Shown here piece after piece: positions 14,891 to 49,100 of a DNA stretch of 64,000 nucleotides. The stretch comes from Iphione sp. A-MEVVRFRX5 (taxonomy: Eukaryota). Position 1 is the first letter of the stretch; every line of letters starts with the position of its first letter. The stretch spans positions 32,116,001 through 32,180,000 of the forward strand of contig OZ320313.1 in assembly GCA_976226885.1 (NCBI GenBank), given 5' to 3'. Made by a program: the position numbers and the translations under genes. Under the pieces are notes generated by a model. The model was given only the letters and a program-made list of their open reading frames with translations, made no database searches and had not been told where the DNA came from.

Positions 14891-16153
14891 ACGCAGTAGT
14901 GCACGATTTACTATTAACTAAAATAGTACTGTTTATATTTTCACGCAAGGAAAAAATTATATTACTATTTAGTAATGAAACACTGCTTTTGTCATACAGT
15001 AGCGGCATTTTTTGAACATTTTAATCAAGAGACTTCCGGGAACCACCACGCAGTAACACCCCTTCAACAGTCCAACTGTTTGACAGAATTACACTACACA
15101 TATAAAACGTCGTTTAAGGAAGTCCGGACGTGGACCCTGACTAAATAGCCCTTCTTACTACATACAGTGGAGTATCACTACCTTTGTCTATGCAACCAAG
15201 CAGAACCGAAGGTCATAAAAGGCCAGATGGTCAACATCATCCTTTACAGACGAATTGTAGGCGTGTTACATAAACCCGTGCTCACTTCTTGTTTTGTGAT
15301 TGGTCAGTTAAAGTCATGAATATTCAAGTAGTTGTAAGACTAACCACGCCTTTAATCTCCATCTAGTACGCGCGCCCTACAAGACAGAACACTTAACCAG
15401 TTTGTGGTCATTAAGTGTTGAACAGTTGTCCGTCTGTGTACACATATCTTCACTCGTTTGTGACTAGTAAGTAAGTATTTTACTATTTTGTTCAAATCTA
15501 TTATTTGAATGGTTTAGTTTAAGTTTTGAAATGTACGTATAGGTTACTAGAGATCTCAATTTGAAATGCATCTCAACACATATATTTAGTCTTTTTATTA
15601 TACAGTTGTGAAACAGTTGATGAAGATACGTGTCAATTAACAATATTCTTAACATTATTTCAAGCGGTTCAACCGCACGTCGAAATTGATGTATAACATG
15701 CACTATAGCTCATTTCTAGTAGCACTGGTATCGATGCTTAATCCACACCTGTGTTTAAATCAGGTGAAATTTGTGTTTTCTAGTGATTACATGCCGTTTA
15801 ACCTAGAAACGTCGTTCAGCAATAAAAGTAGTTTGTATTTGTGACTTAGTAAATCGAAAGTTGTTAATTTCGTAAATCACTACACTGTCCACTTTATACT
15901 ATAGAATACTAATATATGATACGGTTCCAGCGCAGCAGTAGTTCATGCATTCATACGGTTCTTAACAGTTTAACTTAGCGTGGGAATAACTTTAGGATAA
16001 AGACTGAGAAGCTAAATGAACGTTTACCTGTTTTGTAAAGAAAGGATTTATCTAACAGAATATACAGTTTGAACTAATGTGAACTCTGTTGTTATATATT
16101 ACAGTTCATATGTTTCTTAAATGGATATTTTATTTGATTTTTAGTACAACACC

Positions 16154-17913
16154 ATGCCAAAAAAGCATCCGGTAAAAACTAAAAAACCAGGAGCATTTGA
16201 ACGATACGAAGCATATAAACGCCACAACCGACTAATGGCTGCTGCCAGACGTGAAGAGAGAAGAGCAGGTACTGTGTCCAATAGTAAAGTTTTTCAAAGA
16301 TGAATTCTGGTTTTAAAATTCCAAATAGAAGTTGGCAGGTGTTTAACTTGATTGTATTTGAAAATAAATCATTGAATGAACTCTACATTACTGTGAAGTA
16401 GTCGAAACGTATTGTTTTAAAAATGTTTTCTTTCAGAAGTAGGACTACCGCCTACTTATCCGAGACGGTCGAAGTTTAAAACTGATGAACAAGTAGCACA
16501 AGAATGGCTGCAATGGAAAAAAGTTATGGATGCGGAAGGTGGGTACATATTGACGGTTCGCAAACTACAATATACATATGACACAAATCTATTTCACAGC
16601 AAAGTGATAAAAGACCAGATGGCAACATGCAATTGTATTACCAGATTGACACGTACATAAGATTCATCATCATTAATGCTCATACATACCATAGAATAAT
16701 TTATCATCTGTACGTATCATAGTGAACCAACAAAGTTAGAACAAACTGGATCACAATAAGCACATGACTGTAATCTTCCAGTGTAAATACTGTATTAAAA
16801 AAAAAGTATACAAGTTCATGTATAAAATATTAGTTTCTCAATAGGAATTGTTCTGACCGATTGTAAACTGTTGTGATATATCTACATGTATGTTGTACAT
16901 ACACCACATACTAAATACTACCGCAAACTTATTTTTCCATTGAACTAGGGTTCCCTATTTCGGATGAACTGCAGGCAAAGATGACTGAGCAGACTGCTAT
17001 TTTGTACGAACAAGATACAGAAGGAAGTAGTGGTCCAGAAACTACAGAAGTCGTACCAGTATCACGACAAGTGATTAGATCCGATAGTCCGGTTTGCATA
17101 CATTCACAGCAATCTTCTGAAACGCCTGAACCAGGCGCTAGTACTTCAGGAACTAGTCAACTATTTAGAAGTATAAGCAATGAAAAGCATTCGAGGACAC
17201 CAACAAGCACTGTTTCAGGTGAACAGCAAAAGTCAATGATAGCAGGTGAAGATGAAATAGTATACACTTTGATACCAATTAGTGAAAGTGTAGAAACTGT
17301 TAAGCTAGGTGATGACAATCAAAGTCCATCTACACATAGTAGTTCCAATGGTGGCAATGTACTGGAAAAAGTGGTAGAGGAACAGAACAAAAACTTAGTT
17401 TCTAGTTGGATTCCTAAACGACTATTTCAAAAGCCATGTCAACCACCAGCACAACTGGAAGAAGTTACATATCACAAGTCACCAAGACGTGATAAAAGTG
17501 ACAAATCTGCACATTCGCTTTATACAGCACAACAACATATAAAACAGCTCCAAGTATGTGTTTTACAGAATGCCAAACGAATTCTCGAACTAAAAGATAT
17601 GAAAAGTGAATCAATTGATAAAAGAATAACACTTTTACACCAAAGTCTAAACACACTGCAAGCTCAAATAGCGCAAACTCAGATCGACCATAGGGGTTGT
17701 ACAGACAAGCAAGCAGCGATACTGACCACTAGATTAACCGTTGTACACGCCGAAGTTAATGTTCTTCATAAAGAAGTTTCTGATGCACTAAAGAAAGTAA
17801 ATGGGTTTGAACAAGGACTGTTACAAGTGGCACACAAAACAGAAATGTTGCAACAGCAAATGACTGAAGTTCAGAAAGCAATTGACTTTGTTGTTGAACA
17901 AATCAAAAAGTAA
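16154..17913 (+). CDS. Spliced gene A, about 393 aa, basic N-terminus, Ser/Thr-rich middle, C-terminal coiled coil; function unknown
   Basis: Exons 16154-16268 (accATG, MPKKHPVK...RRA, GT), 16437-16538 (tttcAG...GT, 102 nt) and 16949-17913 splice in frame with no stops into ORF 16981-17913. Heptad-like LxxxLxxL pattern in the last 130 aa. Confidence 0.8.
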
Positions 17914-17919
17914 GTTGTT

Positions 17920-21320: not shown

Positions 21321-21785
21321 ACCACGCCGCCACCTTGACAGCCACGACAGTGTGATAAGTTACAAGAATCTTTATAGAACTGCTATAATAACGAAATGGT
21401 TGTAATAAATAAGTACAAGTTGTAATTCAACTGACGCTGTTTTTGTAGAACTATATACGGCCGAATCATACATTTAGTGTTCTTAATGAAAAAAATATAT
21501 ACTTCATATCTTTTTAGTGATAGTGATGGGAGGAATTTCAGAAATATTTGCTTCTATCTAACAAATATCACATTATTTGAAATTCACTCAGAACGTACAG
21601 TCTTGTTGTATTATATAATGGCGTTGTTTAGCTGCATTCCATGGATTGTGTAGAAGTAACCTATATGTCGGTAGAGATATAACTATTGCTTGTTTCAATT
21701 CTTCCCGTTTGTTACAAATTGAACAAACTGTTGATTTCATTAACAAAATATTATGTACTATACAAAAAAAATTCGCTTTCTGCAG

Positions 21786-22409
21786 ATGGACACAAAACCG
21801 AAAGTAACAATGGTGACAGACACGCGAGGCCAAGACTTCAGCCGAATTGTGGAGAACACTCTTGGGCACTTGTATGACTGGACCACTATAATCTTTCCTA
21901 GTGGACGCATTGAAGATGTCATTAAACAAATTCACCGGCTACAAATGATTGACACCAATATTACATTAGTATACTTGGGCCTTGATGATCTAGTATCGAT
22001 ATTTCAAGACAAATACAAACTTACGTATTCGTCAGCTACAGCCTTGAAGCATGATGCCTGGATCAACATGACCACTATTGTCAATACACTTGTAACCTCA
22101 AAAATGCAGCATGTAATTTTCCTTCCTATCCATGGTATGCAAATTGGACACCCGAAGTCACGAGAACAGATCAAACTCAACCACCACATTGTAACCAAAA
22201 ATAGTTTAGCAATAACTATGAACTATAAAAATGGCTACACCACCCCGGACACTTGTTTACCATTAAATGGTGTAGAAGAAAACAACATCATATTTAGACA
22301 TGAACTACTTAAGCGTGATGATGAAATTCCTCGTTATATCATACATCACTGGCTACATGAATTACAACTCTTTATTGACAGTGTTTGTTGCCGCCGGGAA
22401 AAGAAATGA
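21786..22409 (+). CDS. SGNH/GDSL-fold protein, about 207 aa, probably catalytically inactive
   Basis: Open frame from cag|ATG (MDTKPKVTMVTDTRGQDF). Block-like motifs VTDTRG (I), IFPSGRIED (II), LVYLGLDDL (III) and VIFLPIHG. No DxxH block V is visible. Confidence 0.6.
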   Translation: MDTKPKVTMVTDTRGQDFSRIVENTLGHLYDWTTIIFPSGRIEDVIKQIHRLQMIDTNITLVYLGLDDLVSIFQDKYKLTYSSATALKHDAWINMTTIVNTLVTSKMQHVIFLPIHGMQIGHPKSREQIKLNHHIVTKNSLAITMNYKNGYTTPDTCLPLNGVEENNIIFRHELLKRDDEIPRYIIHHWLHELQLFIDSVCCRREKK

Positions 22410-23836: not shown

Positions 23837-25262
23837 ATGGATGACAGAAGCACTATAGTACATCCTACTCCAGTTTATGTCAGCCCACCAGTTAACGCAA
23901 CAACCCACGCAGATTCTACACGTAAGTATGTGATGAATACTAGACGCAATACAACATCATAGTTTCTTTAGAACCATAAAGAATTCTTCCGTTTCGATTG
24001 CTCTCGAAATAATCCACAGTAGCCAACGACACCAGTTGTTATTTAATGTAGTAGTGTTTTATGATGAAGACTTCCTGTCATGTCGACTACGACAACAACA
24101 TCATTTACTATTTGCCTGAGACGAATTGTACACTCGAAATAGATTGTCTAACTCATACATTCATAATTCCAAAATTATTGAAATACTTGTTTATTGTTTT
24201 TGTTAGTCTGTTCCGTAAACTAAGATCAATAGACTTGTTCAAGCACTCAGAATTGATCAAACTAAGACAGAGTACATACGACTAAGACATGTTATCTTGA
24301 GATTTACCCTTTAGAACTTATCATGTCAATTTGTTGCCGAATATCTAATTATAAACTGAAAAAAAACGTACTATTTTTCTGCAGAAGTTTAAAGTTAGTG
24401 AAACTAACACTTATTATTATCTATTAGGTGTTTAAGTAAATACTATGATTCACACATAAATACTTGACTATTATGCACATTGGTATTCATCTTTTCAGGT
24501 GGTGCATCAAGCGACCAAATGCAAATCACAGTGACAACGTCCATAGCGAGAAATTGCACAAACTGTAAGTTATATTTCAATGTGAACATGATTTTGTAAT
24601 ACTTCTTCGACCATAGCCAACATACAGTTATTCATGTAGGAGTTGTCTAGTTCTAATTTTCTTTAAGTAAATAAGATGGACCTGAAAATAACTTGCACAA
24701 ATATTAAACGTCTTAAATAAGGCAATCTCTAACAACTAAAGTAAAAGTTTTATCACATTCAAACGCCAAGAACTAAAACATTGAAGCCAAGTTTCTTGTA
24801 ACCTGCGATTGATCCTTACCAGTTAACTACACCTAACAGTTGTCACAGTTGTTAGTGCAGCAAAATTGTTATACATTGTTAATTTTTTTCCTAATTTTGA
24901 AATACAGCAAACAATTTACAGGTTTATTGTATGTATTTGCAGATGACAACGTTCGTTTACTTAACGAACTTGTACAAACCTTATCAACGGACGTTCTTCA
25001 CTTGCGGATGACGGTATTGAATCTTCAGAAAAAAAACAGCTACTTAGAAAGCCAAATACAACAGATGAACCAAGAGGCGATCGAACACCATAACGCTATT
25101 AATTATTTACTAAATGGCCACGACAAAACAAAGCAGTCGCTCTCTAATGTTGAAACAGACATCACGGCTATAAAAGATGCACAAAAGTCGTTCGAAACCC
25201 GGCTTTCGGCTTCATGTTCTCGAAATCCTCCTATCGATTTAGCTTGGGAAGATGAATGCTGA
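23837..25262 (+). CDS. Spliced gene B, about 156 aa, C-terminal coiled coil; paralog of gene D
   Basis: Exons 23837-23921 (MDDRSTIV..., GTAAGT), 24499-24564 (ttttcAG, GTAAGT, 66 nt) and 24943-25262 (tttgcAG) join in frame into ORF 24840-25262. Confidence 0.8.
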
Positions 25263-27189
25263 ACTGTATAAACCAGTTATGTGTCAAATGCTTGTACTAG
25301 TCATATAATTGACTCTATTACATTCATTTTGTCCGTTAAAATCAGTGTTATATTTGTGTGTTGTATTATTGTCTTTGTTCTTATACATATCCAAGTATAT
25401 GAATACAGGAAGACAATCGGCACAGTTAGAACCGTTTGATTATAGTAGAACAGTAGTTTATTTGTAGTCGTGTATACTTTATGTAGACATGATAGTACAA
25501 CTCACTTGTAATGGTACTGCGTTTATGTTTTATTAACTAAATCATCTTTAAACTTTTGAAGCTGTATTACATGACATGAGTTGCTCATGTATTTTTATAA
25601 GCACAAAAAGTGTGTAACACTAGGTTCAAATGAACAACTATTTACAATACAAAAAATATTAGTTTCTTACTGATATATTCTAGTCGAGCGATATTTTGCA
25701 AGAACTGAACTGTCCTTACATAGTATTTGACTGTCATTGACATAATCGGAAATAATATAAATGTACATGAACATACGATTTTGCATAAACATTAAATACT
25801 GAATATATATTCAGAGATCATCTAATTCCCAATCGGCTGTGTTGTGTTGGTAGGCACTGTTAATGTCGCAATTGACAATATCACTTGTTTGGCCTATAGC
25901 GATAGTGTCTTAAAAATGATACAACAAACTGATTTACTTGACTCATTATTTGAATAAAATTAGATTCCTCATAAGACCGTTATTATAGTTATTTTATTCT
26001 CTGAATGGTTTAGAGTAGACTAGCAGTCGTAATACAAAATCCAAACAACATATTAGATTAGTTTCTTTCAGTAGAAAATTGGTACGCTTCTCACAATAAG
26101 TTTGTATTTTAACACATGTTTTAAGATGTCTGATATAATCAGTTTATAAAATTGACGGATACATAACTATAGTATATAAAGTTTTTAGACATTCACTACA
26201 ACTTGCCTTTTAAAACATTAAGATAAATTCGATGGTCGTTAGGTTGTAACCATTTATAGATACGTACTAAATTATTTGAATTTGTACAACTACAACTTTC
26301 GAACAAAGTACAAACATTCACCCTACATATGTTGTATAAAACTGTCTGACTTGTACGGATGTAACTATTAAATAAAGAGAAAACTTCAACCTATTGTGTT
26401 CTGTCTACCTAAGTTGTATTTACTATAACAAAAATTAAAGCAATTCCTATGGATTAAATAATCTGAATTTAACTAACATATTTACTGTGTTTTGTAATCA
26501 ATAACACATTCGGATATTGAATTATCACAACTTATTTTTAATGATTGATTTTAATCAGTTTTTACTATTTCCTACACAATTCCAAAAGTTTTTCCAAGTT
26601 AAGTTATATGCCATTGTCTTGCCACATTTCAGAACAACTAGTACTACTGCCAGGTTCCATACTTATTGCTGATTAACCGTTATTCAATATAATTTCATGG
26701 GCACCAATTCATTAGACTTTTCTACAAATAAACCGTATCAAGCTAGTATTTCTGTTTGAAAAATACGTTGAAAACATACCAACTTATAAGAACTCAAAAT
26801 GTTTAGTATTTTCAACTTCACCGCCTAATACGTACTACTTTTATCCGTGTTCATTATTAGCTAAGCATGTAAAGCTATTTCACAAATTAGTGAAACACGT
26901 GGCCAACACAGTTCACTTGCAATCTTATCTCCTCACTTGTGCGCAACACATCCGTTTAAACTTAACGTAACTGCATACACCATCATACCATCGGTCTGTT
27001 CCGTATGGTCAGTCTGAAACTTCTTCTACAAACACATATTAACGCCTTCTGCACACAATAAAACCGAACACCATTCTCTGGTCACCCAACCTCCTGTTCT
27101 TATCAGTTCAGTTGTAAACTTAGCGTCTCAGTATACACCAGCGTAGGGATGTACCATTTCTTTGTTTCTTGTATGAATATTCTATAAAC

Positions 27190-27730: not shown

Positions 27731-27842
27731 TTCGGCTGGAAACACACTTCTTTCATCCACCGTTCGCCATCGCAGTTCACTTGAATTAACTGAAATATTG
27801 GACCCACAGTTTTTCACCGGAGGTTCCTCAAAAACTGGGAAA

Positions 27843-36751: not shown

Positions 36752-36843
36752 CTTCCAAACTGTCAACGTACTGACTAGAATTACCCGCCAGTAGCAGATT
36801 TTGAGCACGTTAACACTGAACTAATCCATTCGGAAAGATCTAC

Positions 36844-37420: not shown

Positions 37421-40400
37421 CTAACACAATTCTTGTAAAACTCCAGTAATTGCATTATGGTATGAAAAGGGACAATAACTAATGGACATTTGTACACTCA
37501 TTTGAGTTAAAAACCAGTCTAAACATGTGTTTCCATCCGTAGTAGCTTCTGTAACCTTTTGTTGAACTCCGTATGTCGTTTCCAACCAATTTAAAAAAAC
37601 TAAATTCCGTTCTTCAAACAAACACATATTTACGTCCCCTACTATAACTAACGAATTATTCTTTGGTAGATAAGGAACAGCTGTAAGAAGTAAAGTTTTG
37701 AATGACTCGATTGATGCACGTGGTGCCTTGTATACAATAAAGATTGTTAGCTCAAACTCACTACTACATCTTAAATCCACCAGCAAATATTCACAATTAT
37801 TATACCGGTAACCGTAAGTATTTACAATGGTCAAATCTGTTCTTACATATACAGCTAAACCATGAGACGGCCGAAAAGATGTATTGAACTGTGGTTCTGA
37901 TGCAAACACATTCTTAAAACCAATAATAGGAAACTTTGCAGGACTTTCATCCCTCTTAAAACGTGTTTCAGCGAAACATAACACAGTACTACTCAAAAGA
38001 TACTTATCACAACAAACGCTGCGAAAATGACCAAATAACGATTGAGCGTTTAAAAAAGTGACAGCAAAAGCATTTCGAATTATTGGGATATCTACAAAAT
38101 TCAACGCGACCTGACGGTCTTTTCTTAAACGTTCCATTTCTTTAACAACTCGATCATCCACTGTCACTTTAGTTCTATCAAATGATAGTAAATACAATCC
38201 ACTCAAACTGCGCAGTCTACTAAAACAAACATAATACGTATGAGCGTTAATTGGTCGCGACAACTGAACCGCAACTGAAGACATGGTAGTACCTTGCGCT
38301 CGGTGTACAGTACGTCCACTGCACTGACGCAGCGGAAACTGAGTGCGGTACACTTCCCCCTTCAGTACAAACTTTCTACTAACAACAAACAAAGGAGTCC
38401 AACTAGGGTCGTGGTTCACAGCAAACCTTTTGTGGTACTTCAACCTCTGATTCTTCCCAACATTGGGATCATCGAACTTCAACCACAGAATACTTGGTTG
38501 AGAAATTCCATCAAAATATTGAATTTTTGTCAAAGTACCAGTAGTTCCGTTTGTCAAACCATCCTCCGTATCCATATTATAAGTTATGTCGTACCGTAGA
38601 CCAACACCTACTTTTAAAACTTTCATTAGATCGCCAGTGTCTTTCAAACTTAAACTAGTCGAGGCGATACACTTTGCAATAGATTCTTTCAAGTTATGAT
38701 TCAAAATAACATCTTTTGCATAAATACAAGTTTTTTCAGAAATGCAATTTTCAAAAGCTAAATCATTATGTCTATTTACGCTTTCGTTTGTTGAAAATAA
38801 ATAGTCAGTACCACTTGGTATCTCTTGTACATTGCCAATGATTCTACTTTCAAGCATCTTGTAGTCTTGCTCCGTTTGCAAACCTTCTCTTAACCGATTC
38901 AAAAGCTGTGCAAAGTTTTTGTCGTTGGCTTGACGAACAATAGTCTGTAATTCAAATATTTGGAAATGTTCTCTCCATAAATTTGGAGCCAATCTTGATA
39001 AACCACTTGTATCTAAAAATATCCAACTATCTTTGACAGGCTGCAGTTGATACAAGTCACCAAAACAAATAATATGTATACCTCCAAACAATTGTTTATT
39101 GCCTTTGAGTCTTTGTAGTTGTATATGTATTCGTTCAAGCATGTTTGCTCCAACCATCGAAACTTCATCGACCAATAAGACTTTCAGATCGTTAAATTTC
39201 AACAACTGCGTATTAAGGGTACTGTCTGACATATCTACTATTTGCTTATAATTCCATACCTGCAAGGCACTGTGGATAGTTTTCCCACCTATCAAGAACG
39301 CAGCTTTAGCAGTTGGTGCTACACACAAAACTGAGAGAGCCGAAACTGACATATTACTCGCCAAGTTAAAATGACGTTGTAAGCTATGGTATATTGTTTT
39401 CAATAACAATGATTTCCCAACCCCAGCACCACCTGTTATGAACAAATGCAATTTATTCGCATCGTACAGCACCTCTTTCATGATGTGTTTATAAATTATT
39501 TGTTGCTCACAGGTGAGCAAAGCAACATTATCCAACATTTCACCACGGCTCCAAATGCTATCAATAACTGATGGACGCACACACACATGACCATCTTTTT
39601 CAAAATTTACATCAGTCTGCGGATCATCTCTTACCATGAAAAACAAACAATCATCTTGAATGTCCATTTCCTCTTTGTCACGACTATTTTCATAACCTGT
39701 ATTTGGTGCAACTGTACTTGTGTCAACATTTTTACTTTCTAAATCATTTATTTGTTTTAACAAATTATGAATTGGCTGTTGCACAAACACACAAAACTTT
39801 TCTACTATTTGTTGTTGAACAATACTTTCTAAGTTATGAAACAATTGCGTAAACTTGCTATCTGGTGGTAGTTCTGTCCTCCAAGGTAAACATAACAATA
39901 GCATAATACGAATATATTGTTCTTCGTTATTTTCAAGTGACGGACAATTGAATTTCAACACAGCCCGCTTTACACGTCGTTTATATACTTTAGAATTTGA
40001 ACGATAAAGAATAAAACTGCCTCCTTGCGCATCATCCAACCCAGAAACATTCTTACTTGTACTTTTACTTAAGGTAATGAGAGAACAATAGTCTCCTAAA
40101 CACCATGCTTCGAAAAATGCAGGTCGTGCTTGGTATAGTACCATTTTATCATCAACAAAAATATCTGTAGAATTATCTTCTAACTGTTCTAGTTGACTGT
40201 CGGTTTTCAAGATACGCTGTCTTTCGGAAGCAATTTTCGTATCTAAATATATCACACTAACACTTGTTTTGGTCATTGACATACCTAAAAGCATGTAAAT
40301 ACACTCCTGCGCACTTATTTCAGTACTATTCATAAAACACTTACCTACTTCTTTTAATTGTTCTTGCAAACTACACCGTTTGGATTTCGATTCTTTTAAT

Positions 40401-43400
40401 ATTTGCGACAGCAAAACACTTAAACCACGATGTTGTTTGTTTATATAACTTACAATATAAACTGCACAAGCATACGGATCAATAACATAAGATATATCAT
40501 GATTTGCTTTCCAAACCCCTAACAAATTTTTCATATAAGGATTTACGCGTATGTCTTTCGGTTCTCTTTTCAAAAACACTTTCCATGATGTTAATGAAGT
40601 CCGAACTGCACTAATATACCTCTCTTCGGTTAATTCCAAGTATTTTAAAAAATCGTCAAATGAAAAAGAACTTAATTTATCTTCATCATTCATAAGTTCA
40701 CAAACACGTCGAAAATCACGAATTGCTACCAAATCATCCTTCAAAGGCTCTAACACTTCAGTTTTTCGCATAGGAAAAACAGGAAAGTGAAACCGACAAA
40801 TAGCCTGGCCACGTTTTCTACATGTTCGAGAATGTTTATGCGTCTGTAGATCGATAAATTTCTTGTTGCTGTCCTCCACAGAACTTGAACAACTCACAAA
40901 CTTATCAATATATTCAGCAACTTCAACACTATTCTGCTTATCTGTGCTATACCGAGGATTATTCTTGCACCAAACTAACATGTGAACATGAGGACTTCCA
41001 CGATGTTGAAACTCCACTCGGTAGAAATAATCTTCCACTTCACCTATGGGATTTGCCTTACTCTCTAAAACTCCTCTCAAAAACTTATCAAAGCGAAAAT
41101 CAAAATATCTGGCACAAGTTACCGGATCACTACTAACTAACTGAGCCCTCTTAGTCCATGAAAATTCTTCTATTTCCTCATCTGTATACAAAACATTATC
41201 TATCAAAAGACCAAGTGTTCGCAGCAATGGTATCCAGTACAGATCAGCAGCAGACAAAGACATAAACCACGTAGGAAACCCAAGTTGTCTAATCATAGCC
41301 ATAACATTACTTTGTGCTCGCTCAAAATATTGTGGAGTATTCCTCAACCTATTATACATATAAAACCCTTCATCAGATGTTCGAAGCCTCTCTCTGCTTT
41401 CGCGTGTTGCCACGTCAATCTTGGAATAATGACCTACATTTCTACTACGACGAAGTGCAAAACGCGATACTGCCTTAATCAAAAGACTCTGATATTTTTT
41501 ATATTTGAAGAAAATATTTTCCAAATTTGTTGCGATACGTCTATCAACATTTCGCAATTCAAATTTACACACATCAGAATAACGCATCGAACAATTCACA
41601 TACGGATTAATTCCACCATACAAATGAGGATAAGCCATATACTCTCCATTTGCGTCATAAATTAAACTCAATGGCATATTGTATTCACCCGGAGCAATAT
41701 CGAAAAACAAATCCCCAGTATGAGCATCTAGAAGACTTTGCATTTGCAAATCCTTCTCAGTGACATCAACTTCAGAGAAGTTATCTTCATCACTATCGCT
41801 ATCATCATTGTCAAGTTCCTTAGTATTACAACTTTCGCTGTAACAACGCTCATTGGCTGCTTCATCTACAGATTCAGCTGTCAAACTTGGTCCATCGTTC
41901 ATCAATGCATTAACTGTTTGCGTTAACCAATCGTAATCAATGATAACATTATCTTCTTTATACAAAGGACTATTCTTCACTAACCACTCTAGAGCCTTCA
42001 ACACATTAACAGGGCGCACATTGAATTGCCTGTATGCATGCTTGTTTGAAAGTTTTCTCTTCAACCGAACACATGTAGTACCTGCCGTATTTATGTACCT
42101 CGGCAACTGAACAACAGTATCCTCTACACGTGCCAAAACATTTACAACAGGTCCCTTCAAACTGTATTGAAAACCACGGGGTAAATAACGTATTTGCATA
42201 AATGCGAGACGCCGAGCTACAAGACGTGCCTCATCGACAGTAATTTGTAACTCATGGGGAACAGTCGGCAATATAAATCCGTTCATGTAACAGATACGAG
42301 GTAAACGACGGTCACTAATCGCTTTGGAACATGTTTGACAAATATATTTGCATTCATTTTGAGACTTACCACCTACTACATGTTGAATATGATAGTAAAT
42401 TTCTGAAGTGACTTCCCGAACACTATGAATAAACCACACCTGGCTACACATGCAACAACAATAATGTGGCCCTTCTTCAATGTTAAGAAAAAAACTCTTG
42501 ATACACTTGTCTAACTCATTTGCGGTTGAATCTGTATCAGAAGAAACAACATTACCATTTGTTTTCTTGCGAACTTTTGCATTCTGTGAATTAACTACCC
42601 TGATAGACCGCTTCTGCTTCCTACTCTTTTCACTACTACAGTTTCCAATTATTTGATTTAAAATGTCGGCTTTATCATTGACCACTTTAGTTTTACCACA
42701 AACAGCCTTTTTTCTACCTTTGGTATGTTGTAACGCTACTAAGTTAGGTACAAGCATACCATCACTGTTTATCAACACACTTCTGCAGTTCGGTTCTTTC
42801 AGAGACTTACTTTTCTTGACACTTCTAGTTGTACTACACATGTTCTTCCTTTCAGATTGTAGCCCCGTTTTTTCTTGACTGTTACTACTCTTTTGGACAA
42901 ATTCTTTTACACGAGCACTTCCATTTCTGCTTTTCTTCTGATCGGATTTAGTCTTACTAAACGTCTGAGAAATGCCAGTTGTTTTGATAAAGCCAGAAAT
43001 ATTACCGTTCCGATCCGTTAACCTGTTTCCTTGTACCGATTCACTTACATTAGATCTACATGACTTTTCTGTTGTATGAAACATATCCTTACCTACCCAA
43101 CACCTCAAATTCTCTATCACTTCCATAGCAATGAACCGGTTGGGATAAATAGAATTTATATCTACAAATATTTCACAGAACGTATCAGACAATCCATTTT
43201 GGACCATATGCACCACAGAAATTTCATACTGGAATTGTTGTGAACTATAATATAACTTTTCTATATGACCAATAAGTTCATAAAAATCTTCAAAACATAT
43301 GTGAACAGCTGTACCTTCTGCCGACGGGAAACCTTTTTTAGAACGCGCATGAGAATCAAACATATAGTAAACACCAGTTCTGCAATATACTGCAATAGAC

Positions 43401-43780
43401 AAATGCTGTGCAACAAATATACAGAACGGACTAATCGAGAATGCTTTCACAAACGCAAAATATATGGAATCGCCTTTTGGTATGTGTACACCAACAAAAC
43501 ATTTCACCACATCAAAAAAAATCTTTCTACTATTTACAATCAATAATTGTGGCAACTCACAAGGAGTCAATTGCAAAGCAGTTACTCTCCGGCGAATTTG
43601 TGTATACAGAAAGTCGCCAAAGTCGAGGACATCATCTACATGTCTACTATTTACAATGCCATTACAAAAAACGAACACATACAACAAACAGCCGGCAGCA
43701 ATAGCGGTACATTGATTGCCACGACCACTGTGATTATATACACTACTATTTTGACTCCGAGAACCTTGTAAAACTTTCAT
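37421..43780 (-). CDS. Helentron (Helitron2/HLE2-type) Rep-helicase-endonuclease polyprotein with N-terminal herpes-tegument-type (peptidase C76-like) cysteine protease
   Basis: Uninterrupted 2,129-codon frame, first ATG at 43780. Protease: GSRSQ...GNQC and YYMFDSH. Cys-rich CCMC...CQTC. Rep: LGFPTWFMSLSAAD, YRVEFQHRGSPHVHMLVW (HUH at about 40982), YACAVYIVSYINK. PIF1: ITGGAGVGKS, APTAKAA, DEVSMV, FGDLYQLQPV, QFPLR...TVHRAQG, YVCFSR. APE: FLNAQSL, FAETRF, VYKAP, GDVN, LDWF, SYH. Confidence 0.96.
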   Translation of the reverse strand: MKVLQGSRSQNSSVYNHSGRGNQCTAIAAGCLLYVFVFCNGIVNSRHVDDVLDFGDFLYTQIRRRVTALQLTPCELPQLLIVNSRKIFFDVVKCFVGVHIPKGDSIYFAFVKAFSISPFCIFVAQHLSIAVYCRTGVYYMFDSHARSKKGFPSAEGTAVHICFEDFYELIGHIEKLYYSSQQFQYEISVVHMVQNGLSDTFCEIFVDINSIYPNRFIAMEVIENLRCWVGKDMFHTTEKSCRSNVSESVQGNRLTDRNGNISGFIKTTGISQTFSKTKSDQKKSRNGSARVKEFVQKSSNSQEKTGLQSERKNMCSTTRSVKKSKSLKEPNCRSVLINSDGMLVPNLVALQHTKGRKKAVCGKTKVVNDKADILNQIIGNCSSEKSRKQKRSIRVVNSQNAKVRKKTNGNVVSSDTDSTANELDKCIKSFFLNIEEGPHYCCCMCSQVWFIHSVREVTSEIYYHIQHVVGGKSQNECKYICQTCSKAISDRRLPRICYMNGFILPTVPHELQITVDEARLVARRLAFMQIRYLPRGFQYSLKGPVVNVLARVEDTVVQLPRYINTAGTTCVRLKRKLSNKHAYRQFNVRPVNVLKALEWLVKNSPLYKEDNVIIDYDWLTQTVNALMNDGPSLTAESVDEAANERCYSESCNTKELDNDDSDSDEDNFSEVDVTEKDLQMQSLLDAHTGDLFFDIAPGEYNMPLSLIYDANGEYMAYPHLYGGINPYVNCSMRYSDVCKFELRNVDRRIATNLENIFFKYKKYQSLLIKAVSRFALRRSRNVGHYSKIDVATRESRERLRTSDEGFYMYNRLRNTPQYFERAQSNVMAMIRQLGFPTWFMSLSAADLYWIPLLRTLGLLIDNVLYTDEEIEEFSWTKRAQLVSSDPVTCARYFDFRFDKFLRGVLESKANPIGEVEDYFYRVEFQHRGSPHVHMLVWCKNNPRYSTDKQNSVEVAEYIDKFVSCSSSVEDSNKKFIDLQTHKHSRTCRKRGQAICRFHFPVFPMRKTEVLEPLKDDLVAIRDFRRVCELMNDEDKLSSFSFDDFLKYLELTEERYISAVRTSLTSWKVFLKREPKDIRVNPYMKNLLGVWKANHDISYVIDPYACAVYIVSYINKQHRGLSVLLSQILKESKSKRCSLQEQLKEVGKCFMNSTEISAQECIYMLLGMSMTKTSVSVIYLDTKIASERQRILKTDSQLEQLEDNSTDIFVDDKMVLYQARPAFFEAWCLGDYCSLITLSKSTSKNVSGLDDAQGGSFILYRSNSKVYKRRVKRAVLKFNCPSLENNEEQYIRIMLLLCLPWRTELPPDSKFTQLFHNLESIVQQQIVEKFCVFVQQPIHNLLKQINDLESKNVDTSTVAPNTGYENSRDKEEMDIQDDCLFFMVRDDPQTDVNFEKDGHVCVRPSVIDSIWSRGEMLDNVALLTCEQQIIYKHIMKEVLYDANKLHLFITGGAGVGKSLLLKTIYHSLQRHFNLASNMSVSALSVLCVAPTAKAAFLIGGKTIHSALQVWNYKQIVDMSDSTLNTQLLKFNDLKVLLVDEVSMVGANMLERIHIQLQRLKGNKQLFGGIHIICFGDLYQLQPVKDSWIFLDTSGLSRLAPNLWREHFQIFELQTIVRQANDKNFAQLLNRLREGLQTEQDYKMLESRIIGNVQEIPSGTDYLFSTNESVNRHNDLAFENCISEKTCIYAKDVILNHNLKESIAKCIASTSLSLKDTGDLMKVLKVGVGLRYDITYNMDTEDGLTNGTTGTLTKIQYFDGISQPSILWLKFDDPNVGKNQRLKYHKRFAVNHDPSWTPLFVVSRKFVLKGEVYRTQFPLRQCSGRTVHRAQGTTMSSVAVQLSRPINAHTYYVCFSRLRSLSGLYLLSFDRTKVTVDDRVVKEMERLRKDRQVALNFVDIPIIRNAFAVTFLNAQSLFGHFRSVCCDKYLLSSTVLCFAETRFKRDESPAKFPIIGFKNVFASEPQFNTSFRPSHGLAVYVRTDLTIVNTYGYRYNNCEYLLVDLRCSSEFELTIFIVYKAPRASIESFKTLLLTAVPYLPKNNSLVIVGDVNMCLFEERNLVFLNWLETTYGVQQKVTEATTDGNTCLDWFLTQMSVQMSISYCPFSYHNAITGVLQELC

Positions 43781-45062
43781 TGTAAAGTACAGCTGTTCTT
43801 TTTTCAACACTTTATATTCAATGTCAAAAACTTAATACTTTCCCATTATACCACATAAAAGAACAATAACTTTTCTCTATATTTTTATCCGTCCTATTAT
43901 TTGGTTATCGTCTCACTGATAGCACACCAACACAGTCTTTGATTGAAAAAAGCCTACATTTACAAATCAACAATAAACTAATAAACTTGCGAACAACCAA
44001 CCTTTTCACATAAAATTGTTTCACAACATGTGGTTTTACTCTGTCATAACCCCAAACTATACTTATTTAAATACAACGCGTACACAACAACATCAACTTT
44101 TGACGTCGCAGTAATATTAACCTCCTTCACATTACACACCTATCCTCTTCTTTCTGAATTGCTCTCCACAAACCCAACCAACTATAACACGAACACTACC
44201 GACCTCGGCTGCCACCATGAACAATGCGGACTCTGTGCTAACACCCACCCTTTTTATATAAAACCTACTTGTCTAATCTTCAGTTGCCGACACAAAAAAT
44301 GTTCATCAATACAAACTCTCTTGTTGTTGTAGAAACATCCCCCTATGTGTCATACCGACCACAACGCCATAAAGTAAAAAGACCAGAACATCAAAGTACT
44401 CTACTATCTGTCACGGAAATCTTACACTATAAAAACCGACACAGCGTACAACGCACAAATAAACACATAAACTTAAAAGCGGCTAAGAATCCACAAACCC
44501 AAACCGACCGGAACCAATCCCTACCATCTTTTGAAAAACATTTAAAAACTATTTTTCTTATTCCAATACCCACATACTTCGTTAAAAATGATACAAACTA
44601 ATACCATATTAACAAACAAGTCTACAAAATCTTCTATAACAGTTTATTGACTAAATTCGTATACGCTTCCACCAATGCTTAATTTGCTTTTTACTTCTTC
44701 TAATTGCTTTATTAGCGTTCAGGTTTTCCTCATTCAAACTATTAGCATTCCTTTTAAGAATAGTGCACAGTAACACTAAACATTAAACACGAAAATAATA
44801 AACTATTTCTATTAAAACAGTTACGTTTGACAGCGAAACCCTAAAATTTTGCAATTAAACTTATACTTTAACCATACTTATAAATAGTTGATAAATTCAC
44901 ACCGATTCACTCTAAAAAATATTCAACTACACACACACTCTTTCCATTCTTATACATAATGTTTGAATTATTAAAACACAAAACTTATATAGTTAAAAAC
45001 AGATATATTCCCACCCTCTTTCAAGTTTTCAGTCATCACACTACGCTCTTACATATCGTTTA

Positions 45063-45090
45063 TGTGATTGGTCAGTTTTGAACCAATCAC
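45063..45090. promoter_or_regulatory. Inverted CCAAT pair in the divergent interval between the transposase and gene D
   Basis: gTGATTGGtcagttttgaaCCAATCAc lies 200 bp upstream of ATG 45290 and about 1.3 kb upstream of the transposase ATG on the other strand. Confidence 0.45.
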
Positions 45091-45289
45091 AGTTCACGAA
45101 CATCTTTGCACACGGTACTGTTCCGCTCTGGTCGTTTGGACCACGCCTACCACTCTCTACTTACTTGTTCGCAGCATTTCTCGCCGAGTACCGCTACCAC
45201 ATACTAATTGTACTATTTACTACCACAGTCGTATACAAGAATCTTACAATAAGCCATTAACGGTTTATCACCTTGGCTTCTATACTAAT

Positions 45290-46912
45290 ATGGACATCCG
45301 ACGAGTTGTATGGAAACCTAAACAGATACTTACCAAAGACACAGGTATGTACTAATTACCCGCAAACTACACACTATACAATGTTCCAAGTACTATTTCT
45401 GCGAACTTCCAAACTACACTCATATAAACACATCGTCCAATATTTTCAATGCGGTTCGCATCAGCCGCTACAACGCCGTAGTCTTCACACATATCGCCTT
45501 ACACACTTAGACAGAACACAACGAACACACGTACAACCAGTGAAGATATTCTTACCAGCAAACAATACTCACTTTATATAAACCATACATTCAACTCGTA
45601 TGTGATTACTTCTTCCATATTTCCAATGTATTCCACTTATACGTAATGTTTCATCTCGGACTATATCTTTGTTGATTTAATTCTCTTTCAGCCACTTGGA
45701 CTACAAACGATGTGCCTCTACTGCCCACCAGTCAGGACCCACAAACTATTACTACTTGTAAGTATGGACACTATAGCAATCTTTAAAGGAAACTTCTTTA
45801 GATTTCTAAACATATATCAGTCTTAGTCTTTATTATTACAACTGTGTCCTCATAGCACTCCACTAAACTCTATCCACCTATTAACTTTTGTTGGTTCAGA
45901 AGACCCTATGCTACAGTATTACCTTAGAATATACAACACCTCCAACCAAAACAATTTGCGCCCAATTATTTCCGTCCTTCACATGTTTCCCGGCCTCACC
46001 TCCTTCCTATCCCTAAGAATGCCTGCTGCTACTATCCCCTAAACCTAAAGCACTATACCCGCGTGTGAGAACCATCTACACCCGCACCGCTAAAAGTAAG
46101 ATACAGCATATCCCGCCGAAGCAGTTGCCTAAGTTATACCCATGTATCTACCCAAATGTACGGACCTTCTACACCTACCACGTTGTCAGTAAACTACGAC
46201 ATGTCCCACCGGAGTAGTTACCAAATTATATTCATATATTTCTGTTTTGATACTAAGTCAGCCTATAGATAACACAATTGGCGCATCATCAACAGAGGAC
46301 CCCAAAACAAGCAACCTTAACCACAATACCACTCTGATGACTCCCTTAGTCTCTCTCTCTACCTACCATGACTCATACCAAACCACAGTTGTTTAATTTT
46401 AATATTAACTAAAAAAAAATGTTCAATAAGTCATCCTCTTCCTCAGGTACTTGGACGCAACCTGATGCGAACACAGTCGACCTGACATGCTACCATGTCT
46501 TCACAAACACTTCATAACTATACAAATAACCAATAATACTCCTCATATTGTTCTAGTGCCTACCGCAATAAATGAACGCCATTCTACAACCTCAAACTAA
46601 TTTTGCACTTTACTTCCAGTTCAACCAGTTCCGATCCCGGCTGACGCAATCCAGAATGTACTAGCAGAACTCAGCTATCTTCGAACGATCACATTGAATC
46701 TACAGAGTGAAAACAAGTTACTCCAACAACAACTACACCAGGCAAATGATGAAATCGTACACTGTCGTCACGCAATAAGAAGCTTGCAACATGACCAAAG
46801 CATGACAAAACAGTCTTTCGGAAACTTCCACTTGCAAGTTGAGGCTCTAGTTCGCCATCAAAGCGTTGTCGATACCCACATTAATACGCTCATTTGTTCG
46901 CAAACTGAATAA
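45290..46912 (+). CDS. Spliced gene D, C-terminal coiled coil; paralog of gene B; middle exons uncertain
   Basis: Exons 45290-45344 (MDIRRVVWK..., GTATGT), 45692-45757 (tttcAG, 66 nt, GTAAGT) and 46620-46912 (cttccAG) are frame-compatible. A further exon may start at 46448. Last exon LSYLRTITLNLQSENKLLQQQLHQANDEI...AIRSL...TKQSFGN aligns to gene B. Confidence 0.65.
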
Positions 46913-48649
46913 AAATGTTGGAAAGACAATAATCTACTTTAACAATATGTTCTTCAACGACAATAAACTTTTAAATACTGTTGTTTTTAACGTCGCATGA
47001 ACAAAACTAATTAACGCAACCAGTTAAACCTAAACTTACGTCATGCCACCTTCAGTTCAATAAAATGTTTCCAGAAATCACTTGTCATGTTGTTCTTACT
47101 GCCACTAGTATTGATGTTAAACTATATAAACTATCTAGTTCTGCTACTAGTTGCGGAACGTACAATAGACTATTGATTTTTGTTATAACCTGGCATTAGA
47201 CATTAAAGATGTCCTAATTTTCCGCCACTACGAATCAGAGATATGAGTAACTCCTCTACTGCTAAATGCTACAAAACAAAATAACAGAAAAAAAAAGAAC
47301 ATAAAGCCCACCCACTATCCTGGTTCTCCAACGCAAACGAATAAGAGTATCAAAAAAACTCCTCTACTGCTTCTTGTTCAGAAAACAACAAATAGATAAA
47401 TAATATAGTGAACCCGACACACTAAACAAACAAACAGATGGTGAAAACTGATTTTTCACTTATGTGATACTACAATGCTCATTATCTTTTTATATGTATC
47501 ACTTTGTATATTAATGTTTAAAGTTAAAGTCAATTTAACCATTCTACTTATAGTGAACTTAAATACGAAAACTACAAATAACAATATATGTGCAAACATT
47601 TCTTCTGTCACCCAATGTACCCCACCATAATTATGCACATCTCATTCACGACTCATATAGATCTACTTTTAAATATCCCCATGTTAATTACTATTAATTG
47701 CTTTACGCATTTGCACTTAAGTCCTGTTTTCGACAATACCTAAGAAGCACACAAAGATGTTGTGTTCACTTTTTTTCCAAAACTGCTCCATTTTTATCTA
47801 CACTTACACACAACCACACTAACCAGCGCACTTTAACGAGAACGTTATTCTTCCTATCACACTTTTTCTTGCAATTATTTCACTTAAACCGAACTTTTGC
47901 TGACCCTATATGTCACTCAACTTCAAACAATACTAAATCAATACCAGGAAATAAGTTTAACGACGCATTTACCCGTATCCACCATTTGCATAAACTTAAA
48001 TCTTTGCAACAACCAACTAGTAACTTGCACTTAATCTACAACCGCGTGATTAATCAAGTACCTCGGCGCCATGGACTAGACACACCACCGTCTTTCACTG
48101 ATAGTCACTTTTCAATACCAATATCGCCACCTATTAATTACACAACGCTTTTGATTATCTAACGCCAGAACCCTTCCGAAACAACATCACAAAACCACAC
48201 ATCCTTCTAATCAGCAACCTATGTCGCTCACTTCAACGTCAACCACCACTATCCCATTTGAATTACACTTACAACGCCTATTCCTAACACATTGTAGTTC
48301 TTACCAGCGACGCGACGTCACTGCCTTCTATCAACAAAACATGTTCTTCCTAACACTTCGACAAGCTACTGCTATCACTGACCTAAACCCAACTGCACGC
48401 CATATTATGCAACTTTTTGCGACAGACTCGATTTTATATCCAACAAACGTCTTAAGCATAGCTTTAGAAATAAAGATAGCATTTTACAACACTAGATCAT
48501 GCTTCAATGATCATGAACAGTAGAGATACACCACACTGTGTAGAGGAAGTGCCACATATATCAGCTCCCATAGCGGAACTACTTTTGGGCAACGTTTTAT
48601 ATAGGTAGTGTAATAAAACTTCAGTCAACGCTTTAAACAACGACTGCTA

Positions 48650-49100
48650 TCACTGACAGTTTAACGACCGCCGGCTTTATCAATTCGCCCGCCTTATCGC
48701 TAGGGACCTGTTGCGCAATGTTTCTGACGGTACCGTGATGTCCCCAGGCCGCGCCCTACCTGCCGCCTACTCTTCCATCAACACGGTATAGCTACAACCG
48801 CTACCTCAAATAACAAAGGCAACCGCTCGATACCACCGTGCAGATACACCAATCACGACCTATGCCCGCACGTGACAAACCAGTCCACTCATTTGCATAT
48901 CCGCAAGACCTGCCTACATCCGCATATCTTTTACTATAAATACCTAGCGCATCCATACCACCCACAACACTTCGTTTCCGACAGCCACCATCGCTTCATT
49001 TGCTACAAGCCTACACTCGAACGTTAACTTCAGACCGCTGTGAGAAGAAGTCACCGCCTCACTCACTATCACGCTGTCGCAACAAATTAACAAGTAAGTA
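48650..49100 (+). promoter_or_regulatory. CpG-rich promoter-like island with an apparent non-coding first exon
   Basis: CCAAT 48849, CACGTG 48869, octamer ATTTGCAT 48891, TATAAATA 48935, splice donor GTAAGT 49094. Confidence 0.55.

What the first reader, a model, noticed from the sequence alone, without database searches (positions are those of the whole stretch)
15300..49100. Candidate giant multi-gene Helentron: transposase plus dedicated SSB plus a family of spliced coiled-coil cargo genes
Seen: an intact Helentron ORF, a co-oriented 4-exon OB-fold gene, four compact plus-strand coiled-coil genes (two are paralogs on opposite sides of the transposase), an SGNH-fold ORF and repeated TATA/CCAAT islands. 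I recognise no ordinary housekeeping gene anywhere in the window. Established: Helitrons and Helentrons capture genes; APE, cysteine protease and RPA cargo have been reported. Inferred: these genes travel as one virus-like rolling-circle unit of more than 30 kb with its own promoters. A stable cassette of that kind is not something I recognise as described.
Basis: partly seen in the sequence, partly recalled or inferred. Interest (0 to 1): 0.9.

Follow-up and report, generated by a model that had tools for sequence, protein, structure and literature searches.

The report
Helentron inside an orphan gene array
The window holds an intact rolling-circle transposon gene (a Helentron) with a probable DNA-binding helper gene, lying backwards inside a row of small unknown genes; nothing shows that those genes move with it, though the DNA around it has an odd, unexplained strand bias.

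Summary
The sequence features are mostly real. There is an uninterrupted 2129-aa Helentron protein (protease, DUF6570, Rep, PIF1 helicase, AP endonuclease) on the minus strand. A clean 4-exon, 383-aa gene lies 670 bp downstream of it on the same strand. Four plus-strand spliced genes have C-terminal coiled coils, and two of them (B, D) are true paralogs on either side of the transposase. CCAAT boxes are statistically enriched at the promoters. The 'SGNH' label for the 218-aa ORF found no support, and the OB fold of the downstream gene is plausible but unproven.

The interpretation, one mobile unit of more than 30 kb, could not be tested directly. I found no close relative of any gene, so no second copy was available. 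Indirect evidence leans against the proposed boundaries:
- The plus-strand gene array continues past 49.1 kb to the window end.
- No terminal structures beat chance.
- Four related Helentron loci carry none of these genes.

The simplest reading is an ordinary two-gene Helentron sitting in reverse inside a co-oriented array of lineage-specific genes.

One feature stays unexplained. A mitochondrial-strength GC skew runs from about 26.4 kb to the window end, and it includes the Helentron's own untranslated flanks. This leaves a small chance of a larger strand-asymmetric unit with different borders.

The parts
37421..43810 (-). Helentron polyprotein ORF, 2129 aa (first ATG at 43780): OTU/Herpes_teg_N-like protease, DUF6570, HUH Rep, PIF1-type helicase, C-terminal AP endonuclease
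   Evidence: The sequence shows the HUH motif (PHVHML), the paired tyrosines (VYIVSYINK), Walker A (GGAGVGKS) and Walker B (LLVDEVSM). The endonuclease alignment keeps N, E, GDxN, D and H, but the SDH motif, identical in all six homologs aligned, reads SYH.
44251..44260 (-). TATA box about 470 nt upstream of the Helentron ATG; candidate promoter of the transposase gene
   Evidence: No RCCAATCAS box lies in 43.8-45.0 kb.
34584..36751 (-). 4-exon gene, 383 aa (exons 36751-36426, 36137-35984, 35753-35532, 35033-34584): two OB-like beta-rich halves plus an acidic/basic tail; candidate ssDNA-binding partner of the Helentron
   Evidence: Gene model. Weak OB_MEIOB_N hit, internal collinear repeat, five-strand low-confidence model. 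No homolog found.
36843..37083 (-). Promoter of the OB-like gene: two ACCAATCA(C/G) boxes (37083-37075, 36934-36926) and a TATA box (36850-36843)
16154..17913 (+). Gene A, 393 aa, 3 coding exons (16154-16268, 16437-16538, 16949-17913); upstream CCAAT box at 15296-15304 and a probable non-coding exon at about 15.38-15.47 kb; coiled coil at residues 257-393. Neighbour gene, not shown to be cargo
   Evidence: No homolog. Lies outside the skewed domain.
21753..22409 (+).
23837..25262 (+). Gene B, 156 aa, 3 exons (23837-23921, 24499-24564, 24943-25262); coiled coil at residues 48-145; paralog of D
27843..30080 (+). Gene C, 297 aa, 4 exons (27843-27891, 28689-28991, 29318-29410, 29632-30080); promoter built of 118-bp repeat units with CCAAT boxes (27350, 27645) and a TATA box at 27719; coiled coil at residues 153-271
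45290..46912 (+). Gene D, 137 aa, 3 exons (45290-45344, 45692-45757, 46620-46912); divergent from the Helentron gene; paired CCAAT boxes at 45064-45090; paralog of B
48848..49092 (+). Promoter (CCAAT box at 48848, TATA box at 48935) and first exon with a GTAAGT donor of a further plus-strand gene (E), which straddles the finding's right end
26400..64000 (.). Strand-asymmetric domain: the plus strand is C-rich and G-poor, with GC skew of -0.25 to -0.6 in non-coding DNA. It contains C, OB, the Helentron, D and E, and runs off the window
15088..15225 (+). One of four copies of a roughly 140-nt dispersed repeat. The others are at 27417-27555 (+), 35060-35196 (+, inside OB intron 3) and 48617-48480 (-). 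Three copies lie about 70-320 bp upstream of the CCAAT or TATA boxes of A, C and E

Best explanation
The window holds an apparently autonomous Helentron (HLE2-type rolling-circle transposon). It has one long gene for the protease-Rep-helicase-endonuclease polyprotein. Directly downstream on the same strand is a separately promoted, intron-containing gene for a probable tandem-OB single-strand-binding protein. This two-gene unit, roughly 8-13 kb, lies in reverse orientation inside a co-oriented array of small, spliced, lineage-specific genes (A, S, B, C | D, E ... up to a gene starting at 63.86 kb). Most of those genes end in a coiled coil and use CCAAT (NF-Y-type) and/or TATA promoters.

On this reading the coiled-coil genes are neighbours, not cargo. 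B and D are members of a tandemly duplicated local family that the Helentron happens to separate.

Shown: the ORF and its domains, the gene models, the B/D paralogy, the promoter motif enrichment, and the continuation of the array.

Inferred: that the OB-like protein binds the displaced strand during rolling-circle transposition, as proposed for the RPA-like genes of other Helentrons. Also inferred: that the element's ends lie between C and D.
For: - Helentron domain set and motifs.
- Published Helentrons carry OTU/Herpes_teg_N, DUF6570 and EN in or next to RepHel, plus RPA or Ssb-like OB genes. Autonomous elements average about 9.7 kb (PMC4067079, PMC11417382).
- The OB-like gene starts 670 bp after the Helentron stop codon, on the same strand.
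- Every other gene model in 15-64 kb is on the plus strand. Promoters or gene starts also exist at 48.85 kb, 60.04 kb and 63.86 kb. Removing about 10-11 kb between C and D would therefore leave an unbroken co-oriented array with spacing like the other intergenic gaps.
- Four related Helentron loci show no relative of any of these genes within 10 kb on either side. In three of them an annotated host gene (Rad50-like, LRRK2-like, or an unnamed gene with no Pfam hit) spans the locus.
- No terminal structure encloses the larger interval.
Against: - No ends of a compact element were found either. The best candidate pairs between 43.8-45.06 kb and 33.0-34.58 kb are two AT-rich 11-mers, at chance level (35% of shuffles), and one of them would exclude the TATA box at 44260.
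- The Helentron's own flanks right next to the ORF (43.8-44.3 kb and 37.0-37.4 kb) and the OB gene's introns carry the same extreme GC skew as the surrounding 38 kb. A recent insertion into unrelated host DNA would not be expected to show this.
- All the neighbouring genes that were searched are orphans, which is unusual for ordinary host genes.
- The OB gene shares the RCCAATCAS promoter box with A, C, D and E.
Confidence: 0.55

Rival explanations
1. One reading: one giant Helentron of more than 30 kb (about 15.3-49.1 kb), in which A, S, B, C, D and the OB gene are stable cargo moving with the transposase.
For: - The genes are compact and intact, have their own promoters and are orphans.
- B and D flank the transposase.
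- The OB gene and A, C, D and E share an extended CCAAT box.
- A diverged repeat of about 165 bp in inverted orientation brackets the interval at 14.10-14.27 and 49.22-49.39 kb.
- Repbase already holds Helitron-like elements of up to 39.9 kb (PMC11417382).
Against: - The bracketing repeats are only 65% identical, and the right copy is an unskewed island that lies just downstream of gene E's first-exon splice donor.
- The plus-strand array and its promoters continue beyond 49.1 kb.
- The compositional domain splits the proposed unit at 26.4 kb.
- The SGNH assignment failed.
- No related Helentron locus carries these genes.
- Capture of whole genes by Helitrons is described as exceptionally rare (PMC6431247).
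Confidence: 0.05
2. A larger strand-asymmetric unit with other borders. The skewed domain (about 26.4 kb to beyond 64 kb, at least 38 kb) would be one rolling-circle or otherwise single-strand-replicating element. It would contain C, OB, RepHel, D, E and the tandem-repeat-rich DNA. Its minus strand, the RepHel sense strand that Rep would nick and displace, would have accumulated transitions typical of single-stranded DNA.
For: - The non-coding minus strand is G+T-rich at mitochondrial magnitude across unique DNA, introns, several unrelated tandem-repeat families and the Helentron's own flanks.
- The left 26 kb is unskewed (introns of A and B: -0.02 and -0.08).
- Younger transposon insertions inside the domain are unskewed islands.
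- In three-copy arrays inside the domain, derived G>A per G site is 2.8 times C>T per C site (p 0.04), and G>C outnumbers C>G 7 to 0 (p 0.0005).
- Only the sense strand of a Helitron is transposed (PMC6431247).
Against: - Four related Helentron loci have no such skew.
- The domain's right end is off the window and its left edge is gradual and patchy.
- No terminal motif lies at 26.4 kb.
- An inverted-repeat-plus-palindrome structure at 52.9-59.5 kb, possibly HINE-like, reads in plus orientation, which would put its transposed strand on the C-rich side.
- Transcription-linked or replication-linked bias gives the same direction of asymmetry.
- Four-fold codon sites are uninformative, because A and B outside the domain also have G3>C3.
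Confidence: 0.12
3. The OB-like gene is not part of the Helentron at all. A single-ORF Helentron, or a long-resident and possibly domesticated RepHel gene, sits within an old, rapidly evolving, repeat-rich region such as heterochromatin, a germline-transcribed cluster or a remnant of some other large element. All the small genes, OB included, are local residents there.
For: - The OB fold is unproven and the gene has no homolog.
- It shares promoter boxes with the plus-strand genes, whereas the RepHel gene has none.
- In HLE2 elements, RPA domains are reported mostly upstream of RepHel, not downstream (PMC11417382).
- The region is rich in tandem repeats and transposon debris.
- The endonuclease SDH motif reads SYH.
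Against: - The tight tandem, same-strand arrangement of RepHel and an OB-like gene fits Helentron descriptions (PMC4067079).
- These are the only two minus-strand genes in a 49-kb plus-strand array.
- A 6.4-kb ORF without a single stop argues for recent activity or selection.
Confidence: 0.15

Closest known systems
Autonomous Helentrons (HLE2 group of Helitron-like elements) of marine invertebrates and fish
   Same: Same polyprotein architecture: Herpes_teg_N/OTU-like protease, DUF6570, Helitron_like_N Rep, PIF1 helicase and C-terminal Exo_endo_phos endonuclease. Full-length hits at 33-39% identity to bivalve, hemichordate and echinoderm proteins. An accessory single-strand-binding gene is a described Helentron feature (PMC4067079, PMC11417382).
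   Different: No close relative was found (36% identity for the top hits, 39% at most). The accessory gene is spliced, unrecognised by Pfam, and lies downstream rather than upstream. Termini (subterminal inverted repeats, 3' palindrome, T|T target) could not be identified. The endonuclease SDH motif reads SYH. The element's non-coding DNA is extremely GC-skewed, unlike four related loci.
Large gene-carrying Helitrons (maize elements of up to about 39 kb; the 39.9-kb maximum in Repbase)
   Different: Those elements carry mostly gene fragments picked up by read-through. A set of intact, separately promoted, antisense genes has not been described, and it has not been shown here either.
HINEs / DINE-1-like non-autonomous Helentrons with central tandem repeats (for example Cg_HINE of the Pacific oyster)
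   Same: The 49-64 kb stretch holds several short satellite-like arrays (119, 93, 255, 252, 99 and 67 bp). It also has an inverted repeat followed by a palindrome at 59.46-59.52 kb, reminiscent of a HINE right flank (PMC7492417).
   Different: The inverted arms are about 45 bp rather than 11-15 bp. The right arm is itself part of the tandem unit. No link to the ends of the resident Helentron could be made.
Terminons (giant retroelements of bdelloid rotifers)
   Same: A precedent for a giant eukaryotic element that combines coiled-coil ORFs, GDSL esterases and even Rep proteins (PMC6431247).
   Different: Terminons are reverse-transcriptase-based and telomeric. Nothing here points to reverse transcriptase or telomeres. 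This is a resemblance of theme only.

Membership tests
Helentron (HLE2) autonomous element | RepHel protein with an HUH Rep domain and a PIF1-like helicase | tested here: met
   Helitron_like_N at E 1e-28 and PIF1 at E 4.9e-23. HVH, YxxxY, Walker A and Walker B motifs are visible.
Helentron (HLE2) autonomous element | [quoted passage not shown] | tested here: met
   The Exo_endo_phos hit is below the Pfam cut-off (18.6 against 24.5 bits). The full domain nevertheless aligns with six homologs and keeps N, E, GDxN, D and H. The SDH motif, identical in all six, reads SYH, so activity is uncertain.
Helentron (HLE2) autonomous element | OTU/Herpes_teg_N-type cysteine protease and DUF6570 in the same ORF | tested here: met
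   Herpes_teg_N at E 4.8e-6 and DUF6570 at E 2.6e-18.
Helentron (HLE2) autonomous element | Subterminal inverted repeats of 11-15 bp, a 3' palindrome, and insertion between T and T | tested here: inconclusive
   Searches of the window gave only chance-level candidates. A second copy would be needed.
Helentron (HLE2) autonomous element | Multiple copies or polymorphic insertion (evidence of mobility) | not testable with these tools
   The source genome is not in the collections.
RPA/SSB-type OB-fold protein (Helentron accessory gene) | Significant match to an OB-fold or RPA family, or an OB-fold structure | tested here: inconclusive
   OB_MEIOB_N at E 0.04, below the cut-off. No PDB, PHROG or database homolog. 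The AF2 model has five strands but pLDDT 45. The two halves align at E 0.036.
SGNH/GDSL hydrolase (ORF 21753-22409) | Match to an SGNH/GDSL profile or to the SGNH domains of Helentron proteins | tested here: not met
   No Pfam hit at E<=1. No hits among 1.84 billion representatives. BLASTP E>0.1 against P0010, P0013 and P0086. hhalign probability 0.1%. The model is unusable.
Giant multi-gene Helentron (cargo cassette) | One pair of element termini enclosing all the genes | tested here: inconclusive
   No pair of inverted repeats with a palindrome encloses the interval above chance level. The only repeats that bracket it are 65% identical copies of a short repeat. A second copy would be needed to define the ends.
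Giant multi-gene Helentron (cargo cassette) | The same neighbours in the same order at other RepHel copies | not testable with these tools
   No copies from the same genome are accessible. In four loci of distantly related Helentrons there is no tblastn match at E<=1.
Coiled-coil proteins (A, B, C, D) | Heptad periodicity of hydrophobic residues in proline-free stretches | tested here: met
   Home-made heptad score against 200 shuffles: 1, 8, 1 and 2 of 200 shuffles reach the observed score for A, B, C and D. S and OB are not significant. This is a crude test, not COILS or MARCOIL.

The most novel reading that the evidence does not exclude
The skewed domain of at least 38 kb (26.4 kb to beyond the window end) is a single giant Helentron-driven replicon. 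It carries the transposase, an SSB-like gene and several antisense spliced genes. Its transposed strand bears a mitochondrial-style single-strand deamination signature, which would mean the element spends unusually long or frequent periods as single-stranded DNA, a virus-like lifestyle.
Probability: 0.1. Interest if true: 0.85.

Novelty: new member of a known kind. Interest (0 to 1): 0.42.

Why it matters
As it stands, this is a well-preserved Helentron from a lineage with no close relative in the collections searched. It comes with a spliced OB-like partner gene, which makes it useful for transposon annotation but not surprising.

It would matter more if the neighbouring intact genes, or the whole skewed domain, proved to move with the transposase. 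Helitron-like elements are known for carrying gene fragments, not stable sets of working genes. A strand-specific mutation footprint that marks the extent of a rolling-circle element would also be a new way to delimit such elements.

Even without any link to the Helentron, the skew itself (G about 0.11 against C about 0.26 over at least 38 kb of nuclear-looking DNA) deserves a genome-wide look.

Tried and rejected
- **Second copies.** I looked for them by exact look-ups, a full-length homology search, and viral and metagenome scans by protein and by a 20-nt repeat core. Nothing usable came back. The seven metagenome hits were chance 20-mers.
- **Homolog searches.** Searches for gene A, ORF S and OB exon 1 were all empty. 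The length window of the word-indexed search may hide fragments.
- **Cargo near relatives.** Four related Helentron loci were fetched and searched with tblastn. No hits.
- **SGNH hypothesis.** Rejected for lack of any signal. Real GDSL_2 domains do exist at the N-terminus of some Helentron polyproteins.
- **Structure prediction.** Single-sequence models of OB exon 1 and ORF S were too poor, so no fold search was run.
- **The roughly 140-nt repeat as element termini.** Rejected, because there are four copies, two of them internal to the interval and one inside an OB intron.
- **The 14.1/49.3 kb inverted repeat as termini.** Judged unlikely.
- **Bisulfite-like artefact as the cause of the skew.** Rejected, because CpG observed/expected is about 1.
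- **Third-codon-position skew of the Helentron as proof of a lineage-specific bias.** Withdrawn, because genes A and B outside the domain show the same G3>C3.
- **APOBEC-type context for the G losses.** No context preference in 18 events.
- **Rfam and tRNA scans.** Empty.
- **Two Pfam calls** failed on frame errors and were re-sent.

Full report
**What is there**

The window looks like AT-rich (about 36% GC) animal nuclear DNA. It contains no tRNA gene and no Rfam family.

The largest ORF is 37421-43810 on the minus strand, 2129 codons without a stop. Pfam assigns these domains:

| Domain | Residues | E-value |
|---|---|---|
| Herpes_teg_N (OTU-like protease) | 17-159 | 4.8e-6 |
| DUF6570 | 501-629 | 2.6e-18 |
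| Helitron_like_N | 793-946 | 1e-28 |
| PIF1 | 1432-1648 | 4.9e-23 |
| Exo_endo_phos (sub-threshold) | 1942-2077 | 0.0016 |

This is the Helentron (HLE2) architecture described in PMC4067079 and PMC11417382. The HUH motif, the paired tyrosines and the Walker A and B motifs can be read directly. An alignment of the C-terminal 240 residues with six homologs shows a complete endonuclease domain. The one exception is the SDH motif, identical in all six homologs, which reads SYH here.

A full-length search returned 99 proteins, mostly from bivalves, a hemichordate and echinoderms. None exceeds 39% identity. No other fragment of a Helentron protein exists in the window.

**The co-oriented downstream gene**

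Reading the minus strand gives a promoter with two ACCAATCA boxes and a TATA box. Four exons with canonical GT-AG borders follow: 36751-36426, 36137-35984, 35753-35532 and 35033-34584. Together they encode 383 aa.

Both halves show the beta-rich pattern typical of RPA-type domains. Exon 3 gives a weak OB_MEIOB_N hit (E 0.04). The two halves align collinearly (24% identity, E 0.036). A single-sequence AlphaFold model of exon 1 has five strands.

None of this is significant, however. The model has pLDDT 45. PDB, PHROG and database searches are empty. Helentrons are known to carry RPA or Ssb-like OB genes (PMC4067079, PMC11417382), so this part, if right, is a known feature.

**The plus-strand genes**

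Clean models with canonical splice sites exist for four genes:
- A: 393 aa, 16154-17913
- B: 156 aa, 23837-25262
- C: 297 aa, 27843-30080
- D: 137 aa, 45290-46912

A crude heptad test supports a C-terminal coiled coil in each.

B and D are real paralogs. Their last exons share 31% identity over 78 ungapped residues (E 8e-11). Both have a 66-nt second exon and phase-1 introns. A and C are not detectably related to them or to each other.

The extended CCAAT box RCCAATCAS occurs nine times against 1.9 expected. Eight of those hits lie in the promoters of A, C, OB, D and a further gene E. TATA boxes sit at 21313, 27719, 36850 (minus strand), 44260 (minus strand) and 48935.

A dispersed repeat of about 140 nt lies upstream of the promoters of A, C and E, with a fourth copy inside OB intron 3. 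The copy at 27417 interrupts a 118-bp promoter repeat, so it looks like an insertion.

**The 'SGNH' ORF**

ORF 21753-22409 (218 aa) is probably a real gene. It has an upstream TATA box and an acceptor site at 21786. Nothing supports an SGNH fold:
- no Pfam hit
- no hit among 1.84 billion representative proteins
- no similarity to the genuine GDSL_2 domains at the N-terminus of some Helentron polyproteins (P0010, P0013, P0086)
- an unusable structure model (pLDDT 37)

**Do the genes travel together?**

The direct test needs other copies of the element, and none could be reached. The window's ORFs are not in the exact-match collections. No close relative of the transposase exists among full-length proteins. 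A, S and OB exon 1 have no homologs. Viral and metagenome scans were empty.

The indirect evidence is as follows.
- **The proposed ends are arbitrary.** A plus-strand promoter and first exon straddle 49.1 kb. Another CCAAT box lies at 60038. An ORF behind a CCAAT-bearing tandem repeat starts at 63863 and runs off the window. The only two minus-strand genes in 15-64 kb are RepHel and OB. Deleting roughly 10-11 kb between C and D would leave an unbroken co-oriented array with normal spacing.
- **No terminal structure stands out.** Window-wide and targeted searches for inverted repeats with a nearby palindrome gave only chance-level candidates. The 65%-identical repeats at 14.1 and 49.3 kb are old copies of a short repeat, and the right one is an unskewed island just downstream of gene E's first-exon donor.
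- **Related loci lack the genes.** Four related Helentron loci (L001, L002, L010, L011) have no relative of any of these genes within 10 kb. In three of them an annotated host gene spans the locus. These families are distant, so this is weak evidence.
- **Size alone is not new.** Helitron-like elements of up to 39.9 kb are in Repbase (PMC11417382). What would be new is a stable set of intact genes, since whole-gene capture is called exceptionally rare (PMC6431247).

**An unexpected feature**

From about 26.4 kb to the end of the window the plus strand is strongly C-rich and G-poor. GC skew is -0.25 to -0.6 in non-coding DNA, with G about 0.11 and C about 0.26. The first 26 kb are unskewed.

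| Introns of gene | GC skew |
|---|---|
| A | -0.02 |
| B | -0.08 |
| C | -0.25 |
| OB | -0.42 |
| D | -0.41 |

The skew reaches the Helentron's start codon and resumes right after its stop. The element's own untranslated DNA therefore shares it.

Unskewed islands inside the domain coincide with apparent younger insertions.

Relative to the unskewed DNA, the minus strand has gained G and T. This is the pattern of deamination on single-stranded DNA, or of non-template-strand bias, but at mitochondrial magnitude. The minus strand is the RepHel sense strand, the one a Helitron transposes (PMC6431247).

In three-copy tandem arrays inside the domain, the per-site rate of G>A exceeds that of C>T (p 0.04), and G>C outnumbers C>G 7 to 0 (p 0.0005). 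The asymmetry therefore seems to have continued after those duplications.

Related Helentron loci show no skew. Codon third positions are not informative, and no sequence context stands out. I could not explain this domain.

**Verdict**

The best-supported reading (about 0.55) is an ordinary two-gene Helentron lying in reverse within an array of lineage-specific coiled-coil genes. A larger strand-asymmetric unit with different borders remains possible (about 0.1), and the skew is the reason to follow this locus up in the source genome.

Noticed in passing
window 26400-64000: Mitochondrial-strength strand asymmetry: the plus strand has G about 0.11 and C about 0.26, with GC skew down to -0.6. 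It covers unique DNA, introns, several tandem-repeat families and the Helentron's flanks. It is absent from the first 26 kb and from four related Helentron loci.
   Followed up: partly
window 15088-15225, 27417-27555, 35060-35196 (+); 48617-48480 (-): A dispersed repeat of about 140 nt with a conserved core (ATTACACTACC...TATAAAACG...GTAGTCCGGTCATGG...). Copies lie about 70-320 bp upstream of the CCAAT or TATA boxes of A, C and E, and one lies inside OB intron 3. The 27417 copy interrupts a 118-bp promoter repeat, so it looks like an insertion.
   Followed up: partly
window 48848-49092, 60038-60046, 63608-64000: Further plus-strand promoters and gene starts beyond the finding's end: gene E's first exon; a lone ACCAATCAC box at 60038; and an ORF starting at 63863 (MAIKYLEDFSS...) behind a 67-bp CCAAT-bearing tandem repeat, which runs off the window.
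   Followed up: partly
window 37421-38143 (minus strand; C-terminal endonuclease domain): The SDH motif of the AP endonuclease, identical in all six homologs aligned, reads SYH in this copy. All the other conserved residues are kept.
   Followed up: partly
proteins P0010 (21-160), P0013 (51-170), P0086 (108-221): Some Helentron polyproteins of other animals, including a medaka protein, carry an N-terminal GDSL_2/SGNH domain ahead of the protease. The words GDSL and SGNH do not occur in the main text of the HELIANO paper that surveyed accessory domains.
   Followed up: partly
window 10072-10332 (-): Short ORF with a sub-threshold piggyBac-type DDE_Tnp_1_7 match (E 7.6e-4). Probably debris of a decayed piggyBac-like transposon.
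   Followed up: no
window 52908-52953 vs 57782-57823, 58034-58073, 58286-58327, 59463-59506: Inverted repeat of about 45 bp. Its right arms are part of a 252-bp tandem unit, and the last one is followed by a short palindrome. This is a HINE-like or foldback-like structure amid 255-, 252-, 99-, 119- and 93-bp arrays.
   Followed up: partly
window 50493-50944 and 60430-60780: Two small elements with terminal inverted repeats (26-bp arms at 50493/50919; a second one between 188-bp direct repeats at 60243/60778). Both are unskewed islands in the skewed domain, so they are presumably younger insertions.
   Followed up: no
It has internal GGTGAAACGTTATTGA-like sub-repeats.
   Followed up: yes
window 6000-6829: A G-rich 33-bp tandem repeat (25 copies, GC skew +0.62) that creates two overlapping minus-strand ORFs of 267 and 315 aa. 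These are likely repeat artefacts rather than genes.
   Followed up: no
window 54229-54263: A perfect hairpin with a 14-bp stem and 7-nt loop, the longest in the window, inside degenerate repeats of about 470 bp.
   Followed up: no
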